Below, in pieces: positions 19,473 to 38,373 of a DNA stretch of 64,000 nt (positions are counted from its first letter, which is position 1; every line of letters begins with the position of its first letter). Made by a program: the position numbers and the translations under genes. Below the pieces are notes generated by a model. The model worked only from the letters and a program-made list of their open reading frames with translations, did not search any database and was not told the DNA's origin. The DNA lies in assembly GCF_947568905.1 (NCBI RefSeq), contig NC_079170.1:78368001-78432000 (forward strand), read 5' to 3'. Source of the stretch: Ostrea edulis. Lineage: Eukaryota.

Positions 19473-22400
19473 ATGGATATTTTCTGGTCAGCACTTACAT
19501 ATGTAATTCTTGTCGTTCGTGAAGCAAACCCAGTATTTCATGAAGATCATAACATTACGCACCAGGGAAGCGATTTTGGTTTCAACTATACACATGTATT
19601 ATTCCAAACCATTCTTCTTTGTGGGACAGATTTAATCTGTAACAAGTCTTTGCTGAATGTATTCGACATCCCAATCCAGTCAGTATCAGCTAAAGCACGA
19701 TGTGGGAACTGTTCCTGCGATTGCTTCAACTTCACCCCCGCAATCAATTGCTGCCCCGATATCATCTTTCAACATGGGCTTCTGGAATGCAAGGATGTAC
19801 AAATTTTGTCCAAAACAATTGACAGAAAAGAAGTTGTTGCCTCCTGCCCAGTCGGAACAAGCCCGGAATTATCACAGGAATGCACAATGAAACGATCTAC
19901 TATTGACGTAGTGCTTCAACCTCCAACAACCAGTGATTTGACACATATTTCATACCTGAATAAAAATTGTGGTGCATGTAATAAGGCAACCAACTTGAAA
20001 GAATGGAATATCATGTTCGGATGCTCAAAAGAAGTAGATTTCAATTATCTATCATCCTATCAAGAAATAGTAGATCTGGCAACTGTGCAAGCATGTGATA
20101 TTAGATTTAGTCCTCCCAATTCCTTGCAAAATTGTTCGATGCATATCCGTGAAAAAATCTCATTTTGCAATGTGACAGGGTCATGGCAGAATTATGATGT
20201 GCAAATAGAAAAAGCATGCCTTAGCTCCTACGTCGTTGCAATAGGCATGTTCAAAAACATTTTTTGTGCCATGTGCAATCCACCAGAATTTAAAGAGGGA
20301 TTCCTGATTGACGAATGCGACAATTCTACCAGCATATACAGTGAAGCATGTCGGTTTCTGCCGTTTCAGGAAGCATCGTTTCCATACAAGAACTACTTTT
20401 GTTTTATTTGCAACCATGGTGACAACAATACATTGCACTATAAAGATGTTGATCTCGTTGAATCACCATTTGAGTCATACGTAAAAGAAGGAGAATACCC
20501 ATATCAGTTTAAGTTTACAATTGCTTATAATGTCGATGATGTTAACCAGTACATGAGCAGACTCTTAAAAACATCGAATCTAAATGAAACGGTTTCCAAG
20601 CCTTCAACGGCAAAAAATACATATAAAAGGGAAAACCAATTTCAATGTTCAAAAACATTTGAATTTGGCGATCTAGGGGGACAAATATTTTCAACACACT
20701 TTAACCCAACTCCGCCCGAAGATACATCTACCTCAGATGCGAATACTTTATCCTCGATTAATATAACTAATTTAATCCGAATGAGTTTCGCTTTTTCGAG
20801 ACATGGTACCTGTACACCAGGATTATTGCCAAACTACACCATTCCTCTGCAGAAACAATGCTCCTGTACTGTAGGATGTAGGTCAGATTGTTGTGACGAT
20901 TTTGCCTTAAAAGTTCCGTGGACTTGTATTGATGATCGTTACCATAGAGATGGGAATAAGAAAGATTTTTTGGCGATTGGTGGATGTATGGAAGATGAAA
21001 ATATGGAACATCTGTGCAGCAGTGAGAAGACCCATCATTTTTATCAGGCATTACCGGTTACCTCAAAACACGGATATAAAGAAAATTACGTTAATTTCTT
21101 TTGTTATTTGTGCAACAGAAAGACAATTGACAGAAATTATCCCAATGTCACTGAAAATATTACAAAGGAAATCGAAATTTGGCCTTTGGTTGTATTTTGT
21201 ACTGTATACGTGAATCACAGGAACTTTCATTCACTCCAAAGTCTGATTGAATATGTAAACCAGAGCTCATGTGTACTGGAATTTTCACCACCTGCTAATT
21301 CTTCTAGATGTAGCGAAAACTGCAACGAAGGCCTGACTGAAATAGTCGAAAAATGTAACAAATCTAAAACTTGGTCCAATTTAAATGAAGAAATCCTATA
21401 TGCATGTGAGAATTCTGATTCATTTAGATTTCCCCGAATCAAGCTGGATAACACCATCTACAAAAATAAATTCTGTACAATTTGTAATCCTTTCAAAGGA
21501 AATATAGCAGATAGTTACTGCAGCGATTTCTCTCTACATTCGAATGTTAATCAAGCGTGTAAAGAATTTCCGAGCATAAACGTTTGCCATCCATACAAAA
21601 ATGTCTTTTGTGAAATGTGTCATAATGGTGGCATTGAATCGTATTGTTATGAAGAATTAGAAGCTAACGGAGGTTTAACAGATATTCCGGGTCCCACTCT
21701 ACCACCTTCTCCTTATGTTGGAACTTTCAGATCAACTTTCACCTTTTCAGCGTATGACACTTACGACACTGGTATTGACAAGTCAAACATAAAATGCCAG
21801 CAATACCAAATCTTTGATGATTATCAGGTAGGTACATGTAGCTCATATACATATTGCGTGATGATTCAATGACTGCTCAAATGTTATAATTGAAAAATGC
21901 TCCAAAATATAATCAGAACAAGGGTTGTCCAAATATAATACCAATAACAAAGGTAATCATAGTAAAGACTTAAAATGTAACCCGAATATAGATTGTCCAG
22001 ATTTGATCATGATAAAGAGTGCCCAATGCAAGCATAACAAAGACTGCAACTGAATTAACATATAAAGGGTGCCCAAATGCAATCATAGTAAAAGCTTCTG
22101 AAATGTTATAAGAAAGGACGGAAAAAAATTTCGAACGTAAAATGACAAGTGTTACTTCTCCTTTAATTCCTGTTTGATATTAAAAGATTTAACACCATTC
22201 TGAAGTCAATTTCTGTTTGATATTAAAAGATTTAACACCATTCTGAAGTCAATTTCTGATGAAGAAGCGGAGTTATTTAAAAACGTGAATTTAGCATCTC
22301 TTATCATATTTTTAAAAAATATGATTACACTAGTATAAACACACAGGAAAAGGTTACAGTGTTTAATGAAATCATTATACATGCATAAAAGATTGTTTTA

Positions 22401-22796
22401 CAAGACATTATATAGACTGATTATATGCTACACAAGCATAGCTTACAAATAAACTTCATAGGCACCAGTTGCACGACTACAGATGACATAGTGTGTTAGT
22501 TTTGGAATGGCAAGTATAGGTCTCGCTATTATCTACACTGTTTCATAACTAGTCTCATTACTCTAAACATATAATTTTTGTATATATCACAAATAAAACA
22601 GGTGGTTATGTTTACAATCGAATAGTTGCTAGTGGATGAAATGTAAATATAAAGCATTCTCGAGTGCAAGTAAACTGTCCTTTGATTCACTACAGAAAAT
22701 CAGAACGAATACTCTCGATGTCTTTGATAGAACATATCTAACGCTTTGATTTCAATGTTTACCATTATGATGAAAATTTTAATTTTGTTTTCACTT

Positions 22797-22827
<31 letters not shown>

Positions 22828-24435
22828 CAGAATACTTGCAAAAATTTCACATGCTTTCCCGGGAAGCTACTGCGAAATGACACATGCGTTTCCTTGCTGA
22901 TGGAGGCGTCTAATTTACGTTATACTTGGGCCTTAAAGCTCGAGTTCATTAACCTTGCATTGATTAACACAACGGTTAAAGAATCGATAACCAAAATAAG
23001 GAATTTCATTTCCCAAAATATCCATATCCTATTCAACACTTATGTCTTTGTTGAGGATTTCATATCAATGAGTAGAATCGGCTGCAGTGATGTATTTTCG
23101 AAGAACGGAGAAGTGTTGTTGTACTTAAAAATGTTCATAAATGACACTGTTAATAGAGATGAGATGGAACATAAACTACTCAGTTTCACTGACAGTCGTG
23201 TTGATTGGAATTTGTCAGATATGTTAGCACAGGATTGGAATGGATCTATTATGAACGTTAGAGTTTCAAGAAGTCCACAATCCTTATTCTTGCCTTCGTT
23301 TTTGTGGAAACTTGACAAAAAGACCCACTGCTTCGTCCAGGCAGAAAACTTGAGTCACGGTCCGGCAGTCTACAGAAATGTGCTGGTAAACCCGATGTTG
23401 ACATGCAAACAAGTTATTGTGAAGGACGGTGACTTTGGAGTAGCTTGGACAAAGATAGGGACGAAATATTCTTTCTTAGGCTTCAGTCTTTCCTCTCATC
23501 AATTTGTCTCGTCTGACAGTGGTGGGGTACGCGTGTGCGCAGAAGAAATACCATTCTACACAAAGACAACGACGGTATCGAAAAACGACCTGTCACCGAT
23601 ATTAATCGTAACCCTCGTTTGCATTATCATTTCTTTAATCTGCTTGATCATAACATTTGTGACATACTGTATGTTCTCAAGTCTTAGAACCCTGCCTGGA
23701 ATGAACAACATGTGTCTGGTCGTTTCTCTGTTTTTAGCGCAATTGCTCATGATAATAAGACCCTCTTTCCGATCAACATGGTTATCCATAGTTTCCGCCT
23801 TGTTGCATTTTTCTTGGCTCTCCACGTTTCTTTGGTTACAAGTCTGCTCCTTTCATGTATTTCGTGTCTTCAGTGCAAAAGGTCAATCTGACTTTCTTGG
23901 ACGGCAAAGCAGAAAAATTGTTATCAAATATTCAATTTACGCATACGGCAGTTCCGCAGTTATAGTTCTGACTAATATCGTCATCACATTGATCGTCACG
24001 AATGGAGAAAATACGGGATATGATAAAACATCCGCTTTGATGACGTATTCAGTGGCATTCATTGCCACTCTTATAGTCCCATTAGCACTTGTTTGCATGA
24101 CAAACATTGTGTTTTACATCTTCACTGCGTATAAGATATATTCTACCCCCAAAATAGAAAAGACAACCGGAAGTAGGGTTCACTTCAGTGTGTATGTGAA
24201 GTTATTTACCTTGACGGGGCTGTCTTGGATTCTACAGATAATAGATACCTTTCTGGAGATGTCCATCTTATCGTATCTTGTTGCTATCCTCAACGGCTTA
24301 CAGGGTTTGTTTCTAATGATCAGTTATGTATGTAATGGGCGAGTTTGGAGGATGTACATGAAAGCGTGTTGCAAGACGCCTTCCGATCGGGATATCTCAA
24401 AAGCGAGTACGAAAACAGACGTCACGAAAATATAA
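19473..24435 (+). CDS. Receptor 1: Cys-rich-ectodomain class B-like (Methuselah/latrophilin-like) 7TM receptor, 1319 aa. Coding exons 19473-21827 and 22831-24435
   Basis: Hydrophobic N-terminus MDIFWSALTYVILVV. Donor CAG|GTAGGT and acceptor poly-T-ACAG|AAT join in phase 0. Seven hydrophobic segments with LRTLPG..SLFLAQ, HFSWL..W, YVKLFTLTGLSW, LNGLQG motifs. Confidence 0.88.
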
Positions 24436-33891: not shown

Positions 33892-36800
33892 ATGAACTTC
33901 ATTTGGTACATATCAATCTCTGTGATCGTAATTGTTGGAAAAACAAAGCAAATATACTATGAGGAAAATATTCCGATGCAGTTTAGAGGAGACTTCATGT
34001 TTAACGTATCACACTTAATTTTACAAAGTGCTCTTTATTGCGGAAGTGACATAATATGTAACAAGTCTTTACTAACTGTGTTCGGCATTCCACACGGATC
34101 AGGATCAGGTAAGACAAGGTGTGGGAGTTGTTCCTGTCGTGAAGATTACCCATCTCCCTACTCTTTACAAAATTCCTGTCCAGATGTTTTCTTCAAACAT
34201 GGGCTACGGGAATGCAGGGATGTAAATATTTTATCAAAGGAAAAGTTTTTAAAAGAAGTGGTTGCTTCCTGCCCAGTTGGAACAAGCCTGAATTTATCAC
34301 GGGAGTGTACAAAGGATCGATTTAATGTGGAGATCTTGCTTCATCCTCCCGTATCTAGTCATACAAGAGAGGTATCCTACCTAAATAAATACTGCGCTAT
34401 TTGCAATCAGGAGACTAATGGGAAGGAATGGAATGCAATGTTTGAATGCCCAAGATCGGTTGATTTCAACTTTCTTTCATCGTACCAAGAGATACTAAAT
34501 CTGGCAGGTCAAGAATCATGTAGTATATTGTACAATTCTCCTAATTCAAATGGAGACTGCGATAGGAAATACGATGGAAAATTGGCATCATGCAATGTAA
34601 CGGGATCATGGCTTAATTACGATGAACAGATAGAACAGGGGTGTCTCAGTTCTTATGATGCTCCAATTGGCATCTACAAAAACATTTTCTGTGCAATGTG
34701 TAACCCACCTACATTTCAAGAGAGTGCCATGATTGACAAGTGTGACAATTCTACCAGCATATATAAGGAAGCATGTTCTGTTCTGCCAATCCAGGAGGCT
34801 TCTTTTCCATACAAAAATTTCTTTTGTTTTGCTTGCAACCACGACGAGGACAACACCAGATACTATACTGATATTGATTACAAATCGGCCCAAGAAACAT
34901 ATAAAGCGAATGAGAAATATCCATTTCAGTTTGAAATTTCATTTTCTTACAGTGAGAATAATGTTGAACAGTACATCCGCGAAATGAATTCGGAGTCCAA
35001 TCTAGGGCAATTAATATCAGAACCAACAAGAAAAGAAGAAACATTTAGAAACGAATATCAATTAAAATGTCCAATTATACAGAGAAACTGGTCATTAGTA
35101 GACAAGGAATTTCCAGGAGAACAAAGCAAACCGTACAAAAATATTGAAATGGAATCACCTGTATCTGAACTGAACCCATTACATATGATCACAACATATC
35201 CTAAAATTAACATAACCAATTTAATCCGAATTAGTTTCGCGTTTTCGCGATATGGCACCTGTACACCAGGGTTATTGCCAAACTACACCATTCCTCTACA
35301 GAAACCTTGCTCCTGCACTGTAGGGTGTAGGTCAGATTGCTGTGACGATTTTGCTTTAAGTATTCCCTGGATTTGTATTTCTGAAATCCTTTGTGATAAA
35401 AACGGTAAAGGTAAAAAATATTTGACGGTAGGTAACTGCACTGCAGATAGAAAAATTGGACGTTTATGCACTGATAACAATACTTTGCATTTTTATCAGA
35501 TATTTCCAGTAACGGCGAGACACGGAAACAGGGAAAGTTATGCTAATTTTTTCTGCTATTTATGTAACAAAAATATGAATGGCATAAAATATACGAACAT
35601 CCTTGAGAAAGCTACACGAGAGGTCGCTGTTTGGCCTTTGAAAGTTAAATGCAGCAATTACGTAAATCACAGAAACTTTTATTCGTTACAACATCTAATA
35701 GAGTATTTTAACCAAACATCGTGCGTAATGGGTTTCGTACCACACACTGATGCATCAGAGTGCAAGGAAACCTGTAATTATGAACATTTTAACACTGTAG
35801 GAAGATGCAACGTATCTGGAACTTGGTCCGTGTTCAACATAGACATCCTTAATGCATGTGAATATTCAGAAAATTTTAGATTTCCCTCCGTTCAGCTGGA
35901 TGGAACAATTTTTAAAAATAAATTTTGTGCAATTTGCAATCCGTTTGAATCAAATCATACAAATATACCCTGCCGAGAGTTTCCCGAGAACTCCAGCGTT
36001 GTGAAAGCCTGTCAAGAATTTCCAGATGTCAATGTTTGTTTTCCCTACAGGAATGTGTTCTGCGAAATGTGTTTAAACAATGGCACTGAATCTGCATGTT
36101 ATCAGGGAATAGAAATTGATAAAGGTTTAACAACTTTAGTACCTACGCTTTTGACGACCATGCAACCCCTTCCTCCAGAGAATTTGTGGACGTTCAGATC
36201 CACATTCGGTCTAGGAGAATATGACGACCCCACCGCCGTCACTGAAAACAAACATCTTTCAACATGTCGAGATAATCAAGTCTTTGATGACTTACAGGTA
36301 AATGCAGTTCTTTTATTATAAGGAAATGTGCTTAATATGTTTCAAAATTGCAATTGTTTTTATAACTTTTCGACACTCAAGAAATGAGGGAATGTGAAAA
36401 ATCTATTTAGCTTTAAAATTAGAATAATGCTGTTAAATCTGAAGAACTTTATAATCATTTGACGTAGTTAATCTATAACAATGAGAATACCCACTACATT
36501 TAAGAGATGAGGTATGGGATCACCACACAATCATTATTACTAATTTTAGATATGTCTACTTTATCATCTCAGTAAATCATGATCATGCACATTTGTCTGT
36601 GTCTGTAAAAGATGTTGGCAGCAAATATATTTTATAACAAGCTTATGACTAATCTTAAAATCAAACAAAACTAAAAAAAATATATAATGAACCAGTCAAT
36701 TGATTCTTCAATCAATGTCATGCTTTTCTATGTATGATGATCGAAAGTGTCTGTGTTTTTCTCCTCATTAACAATATATCGTTTTATTACAGCAAATATG

Positions 36801-38373
36801 CAGAAATTTGACATGCTTTCCGGGCAAGGTGAGAAGAAATAAATCCTGTGTGTCACTGCTGGCTGTTACCTCTAAGTTACGATATACTCTAGCTGTGAAG
36901 ATTGAAATTTCTACCTCCACAGTAATCAATGCAACTGTTAAAGAATTAATAGAAAGAATACGGGGATACATTACAAAAAAGATCAAACTGCAGTTCAGTA
37001 CCAACGTTTTCATCGAAAAGATTGGACTAATGAGTTCAGTCAGCTGCAAGAAACCATTTACTGCGGTGAAGGAAGTGTTTTTATACCTGAAAATTTTCGT
37101 TGACGGACTTGTTAATCGGGATGAAATGGAACAGAAACTAGTCGACTTTACTGAATCAACAGCTGACTGGGATCTGTCGAACAAACGAAAACCAGAATGG
37201 ATGTTAAGAGTTAAAGTTTCAAGACATCATCAGTCTCTCTCCTTGCCTTCATTTCTGCAGAACCCTAATGAGACCAGCCACTGCTTTATCATTAAAGATA
37301 TTGAGAGTTATCGATCTGAAATACATAAGAATGTGTATGTGAGCCCATTGCTGATGTGTCCACAATTCATTTTGAAGGACAACGAATCTGGACTTGATCA
37401 TGTAAACGCTGGGGGCGAATATCCCTTCTTAGATACCCCTTCTTTCCATTACAAGTTTCCTTCCACAGATAGTGGTCAACTCCGCAAGTGTATCGAAACA
37501 AAACAACCGATGACATCTGAAACTGATGATTTCATTCTTACAATTCTTACAGTCGTTTCCTTGATTATCTCTCTAATTTGCCTGTTCATAACATTTGTGA
37601 CGTATTGTATGTTTCCAAGTCTCAGAACTCTGCCTGGAATTAACAACATGTGTCTGGTTGTGTCTCTGTTTTTAGCGCAGTTTCTCATGATAATAAGACC
37701 GATTGTCAAATCAACAGCCTTAACCATAGTTTCCGCGTTGTCGCATTTTTCTTGGCTGTCCACGTTTCTCTGGCTTCAGGTCTGTTCATTTCATATGTTC
37801 CGTGTCTTTAATGCAAAAGGTCGATCAGAATTTTCCGGAAGTAAAGGTAAGAAAAGAGCAAAGTTCTATGCCTTGTACGCTTTCGGCAGTTCCACATTTA
37901 TTGTCACAACTAATATTATCGTTTCGTTGATAGTCACTGATGGGGCAAATTCAGGATACGGCAACATGTTAACTTTGATGACGTATAAAACGGCATTTAT
38001 TGTCACTCTTATCGTCCCGCTGATTCTAATTTGTATCACGAACATCATATTTTATATGTTAACCGTTTATAAAATTCATTCCACCCCGAAATTAGAAAAG
38101 ACCTCCGGAAACAGGATTCATTTTAGCGTGTATGTGAAACTGTTTACCCTAACAGGACTGTCTTGGGTTTTGCAGATAATAGACACGTTTTTGGATATCT
38201 CAGTCTTGTCGTATTGTGTTGCAGTTCTCAACGGCCTGCAAGGGTTATTCATTTTTGCTAGTTATATTTGTAATGAACGAGTATTGATAATGTACCAGAA
38301 TGTTTGCTGCAAGTTTTCCGATTTTCGACCACCGTCAACTCTGTCTTCAAATACAGACACAACAAGAATGTGA
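33892..38373 (+). CDS. Receptor 2: paralogous Cys-rich-ectodomain 7TM receptor, 1328 aa. Coding exons 33892-36297 and 36793-38373
   Basis: MNFIWYISISVIVIV N-terminus; donor CAG|GTAAAT and acceptor ttattacAG|CAA in phase 0; same Cys framework and 7TM motifs as receptor 1. Confidence 0.88.

What the first reader, a model, noticed from the sequence alone, without database searches (positions are those of the whole stretch)
23770..24050. Both cysteines of the canonical TM3-ECL2 disulfide are missing in all four receptors
Eight residues before the TM3 His, where class B and Mth-like receptors have Cys, all four have Leu (WLSIVSALLH, ALTIVSALSH, SLVAASVLSH). The ECL2 GYG..C motif reads GYDKTSALM, GYGNMLTLM, GYDKTSTLM and GYDKMSTLM. 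The TM4 W-G-x-P motif is also altered (YAYGSS, YAFGSS, YAFGVS). Paired loss of one of the most conserved GPCR features, with intact ORFs, suggests a remodelled extracellular face or non-canonical signalling.
Basis: partly seen in the sequence, partly recalled or inferred. Interest (0 to 1): 0.7.

Follow-up and report, generated by a model that had tools for sequence, protein, structure and literature searches.

The report
Oyster receptors lacking the conserved disulfide
Four neighbouring, intact receptor genes of the flat oyster belong to an oyster-only branch of a mollusc receptor family that lost, once and together, both cysteines of a disulfide bridge that its relatives keep, and the genes have stayed under purifying selection since.

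Summary
The window is Ostrea edulis (OX387710.1). It holds four tandem two-exon genes of 1319-1341 aa. Each has a signal peptide, a Cys-rich DUF8401 ectodomain, a 250-aa stalk and a 7tm_2 domain. All four have Leu where ADGRL3 and the mollusc relatives have the TM3 Cys. All four have Ala or Thr at the ECL2 Cys. None has a Cys in any extracellular loop.

Of 198 family members examined, 162 keep both Cys, 35 lack both, and one Haliotis protein lacks only the TM3 Cys. The 35 form one clade (97/92 support). Every named member is an ostreid oyster. The sister clade, which includes Pinctada, keeps the pair. So this was one loss on the oyster stem, followed by expansion.

The genes look functional. 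The ORFs and splice sites are intact, 7TM dN/dS is 0.13-0.21, and ECL2 is as conserved as the helices. Five of the seven clade-defining substitutions sit around the former bridge.

My inference is that non-covalent packing replaced the covalent staple. Signalling was not tested. The family has no GAIN/GPS domain, so it is not a canonical adhesion GPCR. The TM4 change is not clade-specific. This is a real lineage-specific variant that I did not find described, of moderate interest. Earlier scan notes do not cover it.

The parts
19473..21827 (+). Gene 1, coding exon 1: signal peptide (MDIFW...) plus a Cys-rich ectodomain of 785 aa
   Evidence: Open frame ending at a CAG|GTAGGT donor. It matches full-length Saccostrea proteins carrying PF28443 (DUF8401) at E 1e-250.
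21828..22830 (+). Gene 1 intron (1003 nt, phase 0, GT..AG, with a long T tract before the acceptor)
   Evidence: NCBI model P0002 joins ...FDDYQ to NTCKNFTCFPGK across it.
22831..24435 (+). Gene 1, coding exon 2: stalk domain (about 250 aa), 7TM domain (from about 23593) and stop
   Evidence: 7tm_2 at 48 bits. 512 of 513 residues identical to P0002 of Ostrea edulis. AlphaFold model pLDDT 85 with seven helices plus H8.
23782..23784 (+). Gene 1: Leu codon (TTA) at the TM3 Cys position (residue 318 of exon 2)
24016..24042 (+). Gene 1: ECL2 motif GYDKTSALM. The Cys-equivalent codon is GCT (Ala) at 24034-24036.
23938..23955 (+). Gene 1: TM4 motif YAYGSS (family norm Y.YG.P)
33892..36297 (+). Gene 2, coding exon 1 (802 aa ectodomain)
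   Evidence: NCBI calls a 1336-aa product here with DUF8401 (weak) plus 7tm_2.
36793..38373 (+). Gene 2, coding exon 2 (stalk plus 7TM). TM3 Leu at 37720-37722; ECL2 GYGNMLTLM at 37954-37980.
43670..46096 (+). Gene 3, coding exon 1 (809 aa ectodomain)
48895..50493 (+). Gene 3, coding exon 2. TM3 Leu at 49846-49848; ECL2 GYDKTSTLM at 50080-50106.
55645..58050 (+). Gene 4, coding exon 1 (802 aa ectodomain)
61793..63388 (+). Gene 4, coding exon 2. TM3 Leu at 62741-62743; ECL2 GYDKMSTLM at 62975-63001. Recent duplicate of gene 3 (dS 0.03).

Best explanation
These are four functional tandem paralogues of an oyster-specific (Ostreidae) clade within a mollusc family of large orphan receptors. Each has a signal peptide, a DUF8401 Cys-rich ectodomain, a ferredoxin-like stalk and a class-B-type 7tm_2 domain. 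In the stem of this clade, after its split from the branch that contains the Pinctada members, both cysteines of the TM3-ECL2 disulfide were replaced (TM3 C>L/M; ECL2 C>T/A), together with neighbouring residues. The clade then diversified and expanded by tandem duplication under purifying selection. Shown here: the paired absence, its single origin, its taxonomic range, intact genes and sequence constraint. Inferred: ECL2 is still a structured lid, now held on TM3 by non-covalent, mostly hydrophobic packing (Leu/Met on TM3 against the conserved T-L-M of ECL2), and the proteins still work as surface 7TM receptors with ordinary transducer coupling.
For: Both Cys are absent in all four genes, and no Cys is left in any extracellular loop. 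Of 198 family members, 162 have both Cys, 35 have neither and 1 has only the ECL2 Cys. The Cys-less proteins are monophyletic at UFBoot 97 / SH-aLRT 92, and 97% of bootstrap trees need a single change. The trait columns were left out of the tree. The sister clade, with Pinctada imbricata P0090 and P0094, keeps the pair (95/94). Named Cys-less members are Ostrea edulis, Saccostrea echinata, S. cucullata and Magallana gigas. Saccostrea also keeps a Cys-bearing paralogue, P0143, elsewhere in the family. The ORFs are intact at 1319-1341 aa with GT..AG phase-0 introns in all four genes. dN/dS is 0.13-0.21 over the 7TM with dS above 1. No exon frameshifts appear in other individuals' DNA contigs. 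Two 4.4-4.5 kb Logan contigs carry an uninterrupted 1331-aa Cys-less orthologue, which looks like spliced mRNA. ECL2 entropy is 1.39 against a 7TM mean of 1.25 in the clade (2.27 against 2.28 in relatives), and five of the seven clade-defining substitutions lie at TM3-top/ECL2. The stalk cysteines are unchanged. The model has pLDDT 85, ECL2 blocks score 82-85, and the 7TM matches ADGRL3/L2/E1/G2 at TM 0.7-0.82.
Against: There is no RNA evidence for the four O. edulis genes themselves. The runs found are DNA-like: they cover the intron and show no joints. NCBI's model of gene 1 starts at an internal Met, giving 605 aa. The TM3 position is not uniformly hydrophobic in the clade (L, M, H, T, A, V, R, K), which weakens a simple Leu-Leu packing story. 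I could not read model coordinates, so the contact between residues 318 and 402 was not measured. Surface expression and coupling were not tested. dN/dS between genes 3 and 4 in the ectodomain is 0.69, on very few changes.
Confidence: 0.78

Rival explanations
1. The loss marks a change of mechanism. Without the staple, ECL2 becomes a mobile gate, or the receptors no longer signal as G-protein-coupled receptors. They might instead act as adhesion or scaffold molecules, or be driven by the stalk helix or ectodomain entering the 7TM pocket.
For: The family has no GAIN/GPS domain or Stachel motif, so its activation mode is unknown. A helix (237-251) directly precedes TM1 in the models. The class-B polar-network positions are already unusual family-wide: Asn at 2.50 and Cys at 3.50, in CSFHMF. 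ECL1 is two residues shorter in the clade.
Against: The unusual TM2/TM3 residues are shared with the Cys-bearing relatives, so they do not track the loss. The TM6 and TM7 motifs align with ADGRL3. ECL2 is as constrained as the helices, which does not fit a floppy loop.
Confidence: 0.15
2. The genes are decaying or non-functional copies whose loss of the disulfide reflects relaxed constraint.
For: No transcript evidence for these four loci. Tandem arrays often contain dying copies. A 24-aa tail relic lies downstream of gene 3.
Against: Four uninterrupted reading frames of about 1330 aa with conserved splice sites. dN/dS is 0.13-0.31 at dS above 1. The Cys-less state is kept across at least three oyster genera in at least 31 distinct sequences. 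An orthologue appears as an mRNA-like contig.
Confidence: 0.05
3. This is an alignment artefact: another cysteine pair substitutes for the canonical one.
For: HMMER and MAFFT disagree by one residue on the ECL2 position.
Against: There are zero cysteines in ECL1, ECL2, ECL3 and the pre-TM1 linker in 35 of 35 clade members. The remaining 7TM cysteines lie inside helices, for example C339 at the 3.50 position. The stalk cysteines are the same set as in the Cys-bearing relatives.
Confidence: 0.02

Closest known systems
Latrophilin-type adhesion GPCR 7TM domains (ADGRL3, ADGRL2; also ADGRE1, ADGRG2, ADGRD1)
   Same: They are the best sequence and fold matches of the 7TM domain (E 1e-18; TM 0.7-0.82). 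They share the TM3 llHf.WL, TM6 GL(T/S)W and TM7 N.LQG.F motifs, and both have a large ectodomain.
   Different: No GAIN/GPS domain and no Stachel. The ECL2 C-W-L reads S/T-A/T-L and the TM3 Cys is Leu. E3.50 is Cys. The ectodomain is DUF8401 plus a ferredoxin-like stalk.
Cys-bearing members of the same mollusc DUF8401-7tm_2 family (e.g. Pinctada imbricata P0090 and P0094; Pecten, Argopecten, Mytilus, Sinanodonta, gastropods)
   Same: The same architecture and length (about 1300 aa), the same stalk cysteines, the same CSFHMF motif in TM3 and the same ECL2 length.
   Different: They keep the TM3 Cys and the ECL2 GYG...C(F/Y)(L/I). The oyster clade has L/M...S in TM3 and GYD...T-L-M in ECL2, and ECL1 is two residues shorter.
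Class A GPCRs that naturally lack the TM3-ECL2 disulfide (S1P/LPA, cannabinoid and melanocortin receptors). This is from my own knowledge and was not tested here.
   Same: They set a precedent that a 7TM receptor can fold and signal without this bridge.
   Different: They belong to a different class (7tm_1). As I recall, they usually keep other extracellular disulfides within loops or the N-terminus. The oyster clade has no loop cysteine at all.
Drosophila Methuselah / Mth-like receptors (the label NCBI gives several relatives)
   Same: A 7tm_2 domain without a GPS. A lineage expansion in Crassostrea gigas has been reported (PMC4768249).
   Different: No Methuselah_N ectodomain was detected. 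Placement among Mth/Mthl receptors was not tested here.

Membership tests
Pfam 7tm_2 (class B, secretin/adhesion-type 7TM) | Match to PF00002 above the gathering score | tested here: met
   40.5-48.4 bits against a cut-off of 20.6 in all four genes.
Pfam 7tm_2 (class B, secretin/adhesion-type 7TM) | Seven-helix fold resembling solved class B receptors | tested here: met
   AlphaFold model pLDDT 85 with 7 TM helices plus H8. Foldseek hits to ADGRL3, L2, E1, G2 and PTH1R, with target TM 0.7-0.82.
Pfam 7tm_2 (class B, secretin/adhesion-type 7TM) | Conserved TM3-ECL2 disulfide (ECL2 CW motif) | tested here: not met
   Leu at the TM3 Cys and Ala/Thr at the ECL2 Cys, with no loop cysteines. The CW motif is reported across all 33 human aGPCRs (PMC8263569).
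Adhesion GPCR (class B2) | GAIN domain with a GPS motif directly before TM1 | tested here: not met
   No GPS or GAIN Pfam hit in the window proteins or in full-length relatives. The stalk model (pLDDT 90.6) is a ferredoxin-like alpha/beta domain plus a small beta part. No GAIN match appeared in the Foldseek, VIA-wide or Atlas searches.
Adhesion GPCR (class B2) | Tethered agonist (Stachel) after an HL|T/S cleavage site | tested here: not met
   The pre-TM1 sequence (...RVCAEEIPFYTKTTTVSKNDLSP...) has no HLT/HLS site by inspection. Function was not tested.
Adhesion GPCR (class B2) | Large modular ectodomain | tested here: met
   About 1040 extracellular residues: DUF8401 modules plus the stalk.
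Methuselah / Mth-like | Methuselah_N ectodomain with ten cysteines | tested here: not met
   No Pfam hit. Per PMC4768249 this ectodomain is a derived feature of insect members only.
Methuselah / Mth-like | 7TM groups with Mth/Mthl in a phylogeny | not tested
Mollusc DUF8401-7tm_2 receptor family | DUF8401 (PF28443) ectodomain fused to 7tm_2 | tested here: met
   The model is absent from the local Pfam copy. Precomputed hits exist on close full-length relatives and, marked weak, on the NCBI 1336-aa product of gene 2 in this window. Exon 1 matches those relatives at E 1e-250.
Mollusc DUF8401-7tm_2 receptor family | Stalk with conserved cysteines (C8, C19, C85, C167, C192, C236) and the TM3 CSFHMF motif | tested here: met

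The most novel reading that the evidence does not exclude
A whole, expanding clade of class-B-type receptors works with a completely cysteine-free extracellular loop face. On this reading the loss was adaptive rather than neutral. It could make folding and gating independent of extracellular redox state in an intertidal animal. Or it could free ECL2 to move for a new activation mode driven by the stalk helix or ectodomain. The clade would then be a natural experiment on what the 'universal' GPCR disulfide is for.
Probability: 0.12. Interest if true: 0.65.

Novelty: new variant of a known kind. Interest (0 to 1): 0.42.

Why it matters
The TM3-ECL2 disulfide is one of the most conserved GPCR features. 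In adhesion and secretin receptors the ECL2 CW motif is needed for stability and activation (PMC8263569). Here a clade of a 7tm_2 receptor family has been without it since before the ostreid genera sampled here diverged, and it remains under selection. Close relatives that keep the bridge (Pinctada) are available for comparison. That gives a clean natural pair for asking how the bridge can be replaced, using Cys-swap mutants in both directions. It also flags a large orphan mollusc receptor family (DUF8401-7tm_2, 451 cluster representatives at E up to 1e-30) whose automatic names, 'adhesion GPCR E3-like' and 'Mth-like', are not backed by the defining domains.

Tried and rejected
1. RNA evidence. 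The one run search returned only runs that cover the intron and show no joints, so they are DNA-like. Nothing can be said about expression or splicing of the four loci.

2. L001, the contig of P0003, is genomic O. edulis and not a transcript.

3. Fold assignment of the stalk. Foldseek on PDB gave nothing at E up to 0.001. VIA-wide gave only Z about 5 (viral Rep domains, the Gpr126 SEA region, the MUC16 SEA domain). Atlas gave TM up to 0.37. So 'SEA-like' is only a weak lead, and a GAIN domain is not supported.

4. The local Pfam copy gives nothing for the ectodomain exons.

5. Paper searches for DUF8401, for Mth-like receptors in bivalves, and for oyster adhesion or class B GPCR repertoires found no description of this loss.

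6. Earlier scan notes on GPCRs in this genome concern other loci.

7. I rejected the pseudogene reading and the 'another Cys pair' reading.

8. I could not measure the distance between residues 318 and 402, because model coordinates are not exposed.

Full report
**What is in the window**

The window is from Ostrea edulis. ORF 22894-24432 is 512/513 identical to NCBI's 'adhesion G protein-coupled receptor E3-like [Ostrea edulis]' (P0002). That protein is encoded on OX387710.1 of GCA_947568905.1.

Four long + strand ORFs of 513-527 aa each carry a 7tm_2 domain, at 40-48 bits against a gathering score of 20.6. Each lies 0.5-3.7 kb downstream of an ORF of about 830 aa that is rich in cysteines.

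NCBI's model P0002 splices the end of the first ORF to the second (...FDDYQ | NTCKNFTCFPGK...). The DNA there shows CAG|GTAGGT and a T-rich tract ending in ACAG|. The same phase-0 GT..AG junction is present in all four copies. The resulting reading frames are uninterrupted at 1319, 1328, 1341 and 1333 aa, and each starts with a signal-peptide-like segment.

Full-length relatives of 1260-1331 aa combine PF28443 (DUF8401) with PF00002. They occur in Saccostrea echinata, S. cucullata and Pinctada imbricata. NCBI itself calls a 1336-aa DUF8401(weak)+7tm_2 product for gene 2 of this window. tblastn finds only these four genes in the window, plus a 24-aa relic of a C-terminal tail.

**Check of the observation**

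All the quoted strings are there.

- **TM3.** The best solved relative is ADGRL3 (7sf7, E 1e-18). Its TM3 Cys aligns with the Leu eight residues before the conserved His.
- **ECL2.** ADGRL3's C-W-L aligns with S-A-L of the window protein. In the family alignment the relatives read GYGxxxC(F/Y)(L/I), and the Cys column falls on Ala/Thr of GYDKTS-A/T-LM. Under either alignment the loop has no Cys.
- **All loops.** Using the helices of the AlphaFold model to delimit loops, 35 of 35 Cys-less proteins have no cysteine in the pre-TM1 linker, ECL1/TM3-top, ECL2 or ECL3. Among the relatives, 161 of 162 have exactly one in ECL1/TM3-top and 160 of 162 exactly one in ECL2. The 'another Cys pair' refutation therefore fails.
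- **Stalk.** The stalk cysteines are the same in both groups.
- **TM4.** The strings are also correct, but ADGRL3 itself has Tyr rather than Trp there. The family norm is Y/F-G-x-P. Pro is replaced in only 26 of 35 clade members, and also in 32 of 162 relatives. This part of the finding is not specific.

**How widespread the loss is, and its date**

A word-index search found 60 relatives. The 24 closest lack both Cys, and every named one is an oyster. Those from Pecten, Mytilus and gastropods keep both.

An exhaustive HMMER search of 1.84 billion representatives gave 3661 hits at E up to 1e-3 and 451 at E up to 1e-30. Pooling all sequences with a 7TM region gave 198 proteins:

| State | Count |
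|---|---|
| Both Cys | 162 |
| Neither Cys (including the four window genes) | 35 |
| ECL2 Cys only (Haliotis rubra P0054, on a long branch) | 1 |

I built trees of the 7TM domain with the trait columns removed. Both place all Cys-less proteins on one side of a single branch. The quick tree of 97 rows gave SH-aLRT 93. The careful tree of 64 rows gave UFBoot 97 / SH-aLRT 92, and 97% of bootstrap trees need one change.

The sister group (95/94) keeps both Cys and contains two Pinctada imbricata proteins of 1318 and 1322 aa. Named Cys-less members come from Ostrea, Saccostrea and Magallana. Saccostrea cucullata also has a Cys-bearing paralogue, P0143, in a distant part of the family.

So the pair was lost once, in one paralogue lineage on the oyster stem. 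This happened after the split from the branch that holds the pearl-oyster members and before the ostreid genera diverged. The lineage then diversified into several deep subclades and tandem arrays. No intermediate with a single Cys was seen inside the clade, so the order of the two losses cannot be told.

**Are the genes functional?**

- Nei-Gojobori dN/dS among genes 1, 2 and 3 is 0.13-0.21 over the 7TM, 0.16-0.24 over exon 2 and 0.24-0.31 over the ectodomain. dS exceeds 1 in these comparisons.
- Genes 3 and 4 are recent duplicates, with dS 0.03.
- DNA contigs of other O. edulis individuals show SNPs but no indels in the exons.
- Two Logan contigs of 4.4-4.5 kb, from two runs, carry an uninterrupted 1331-aa Cys-less orthologue (P0069) with short flanks. 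This is what a spliced mRNA would give.
- Direct RNA evidence for the four window genes could not be obtained. The only runs returned cover the intron and show no joints.

**What changed with the loss**

Seven positions are conserved in the 162 Cys-bearing relatives and differ in the clade. Five of them lie at the former bridge:

- TM3: C>L (also M and others), and G>S four residues later.
- ECL2: GYG>GYD, C>T, and F>L.

ECL1 is two residues shorter, while ECL2 length is unchanged. ECL2 is not released from constraint. Its mean column entropy in the clade is 1.39 against 1.25 for the whole 7TM; in the relatives the figures are 2.27 and 2.28.

The AlphaFold model of exon 2 (65-sequence alignment) has mean pLDDT 85.1, with seven helices and helix 8. 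The ECL2 blocks score 82-85. Its 7TM matches ADGRL3, ADGRL2, ADGRE1 and ADGRG2 with target TM-scores of 0.7-0.82.

From this I infer that ECL2 remains an ordered lid, and that the covalent staple was replaced by non-covalent packing. This is inference only. I could not read model coordinates, and the TM3 position is not uniformly hydrophobic in the clade.

**What kind of receptor is it?**

The 7TM is class-B-type and nearest to latrophilins. However, neither the window proteins nor full-length relatives give GPS, GAIN, HRM or Methuselah_N hits.

A separate model of the 255-aa stalk has pLDDT 90.6 and pTM 0.87. It shows a beta-alpha-beta-beta-alpha-beta ferredoxin-like domain (residues 25-184), a small beta part, and a helix (237-251) leading into TM1. 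Fold searches give only weak matches with Z about 5. These include the SEA region of Gpr126 and a MUC16 SEA domain, and none is a GAIN domain.

The family-wide TM3 motif CSFHMF puts Cys at the class-B E3.50 position, and Asn aligns with H2.50. These oddities are shared with the Cys-bearing relatives, so they are not linked to the loss.

The family is therefore best described as a mollusc DUF8401-7tm_2 orphan receptor family. It is adhesion-like in layout but is not a canonical adhesion GPCR. Its 'Mth-like' label is untested.

**Comparison with what is known**

PMC8263569 states that the TM3-ECL2 disulfide is conserved, and that a conserved stretch around the CW motif occurs in ECL2 of all 33 human aGPCRs. 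Mutating the Trp or Ile of that motif destabilises ADGRG2 and abolishes Stachel signalling. PMC4768249 notes a Mth/Mthl expansion in Crassostrea gigas but says nothing on these cysteines. DUF8401 occurs in no paper of the library. I found no description of the loss.

From my own knowledge, which I did not test here, some class A receptors (S1P/LPA, cannabinoid, melanocortin) also lack this bridge. Dispensability of the bridge is therefore not new in principle. What is new is a clade-wide paired loss in a 7tm_2 family with no loop cysteine left.

**Verdict**

This is a real lineage-specific variant that I did not find described, of moderate interest, and it comes with a good natural comparison set.

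Noticed in passing
window 9782-11053 (+): An intronless 423-aa ORF with two B-box zinc fingers (PF00643 at E 1e-16; ANCHR-like B-box). By eye, its C-terminal half looks like a beta-propeller or NHL repeat. It may be one of the TRIM-like genes that are expanded in bivalves.
   Followed up: partly
window 51332-51403 (+): A 24-aa stretch 83% identical to the C-terminal tail of gene 2. It lies about 850 bp downstream of gene 3 and is probably a relic of an earlier duplication or rearrangement in the array.
   Followed up: no
window 46097-46219 and 58051-58158: Directly after the exon-1 donor of genes 3 and 4, the intron opens with a CAT/CAC microsatellite. In the exon's frame it reads as a His-rich tail. 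Intron retention would therefore append a poly-His/Asp tail and a stop, giving a secreted ectodomain.
   Followed up: no
window 22800-22830: An unusually long run of T (about 30 bases) forms the polypyrimidine tract of gene 1's acceptor. Reads seem to be cut there in the contig data.
   Followed up: no
window 19473-21827 and the other three first exons: The ectodomain carries repeated (Y/F)(K/R)N.FC..CN motifs and two CxC...CC.D(F/I) stretches that resemble somatomedin-B modules. UniProt labels a Mytilus fragment of a related protein (P0239) 'SMB domain-containing'. The local Pfam copy finds nothing, and Pfam files the region as DUF8401.
   Followed up: partly
P0054 (Haliotis rubra, 397 aa): This is the only relative with a half-loss: the TM3 Cys is Ser and the ECL2 Cys is kept. 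It sits on a long branch next to Haliotis paralogues that have both Cys. It could be a decaying copy or a gene-model error.
   Followed up: no
TM3 of relatives (column of W335 of exon 2, gene 1): About half of the Cys-bearing relatives have Cys where the oyster clade and ADGRL3 have the conserved TM3 Trp (F.WL versus FGC(M/L)). This gives two membrane-embedded cysteines four residues apart, together with the CSFHMF Cys.
   Followed up: no
L004 10001-12821 (same DNA as window gene 1): NCBI's model of gene 1 (605 aa) starts at an internal Met of exon 1, although the frame is open for another 715 codons upstream and has a signal peptide. The neighbouring gene 2 is modelled at 1336 aa. Gene 1's annotation is probably truncated.
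   Followed up: partly
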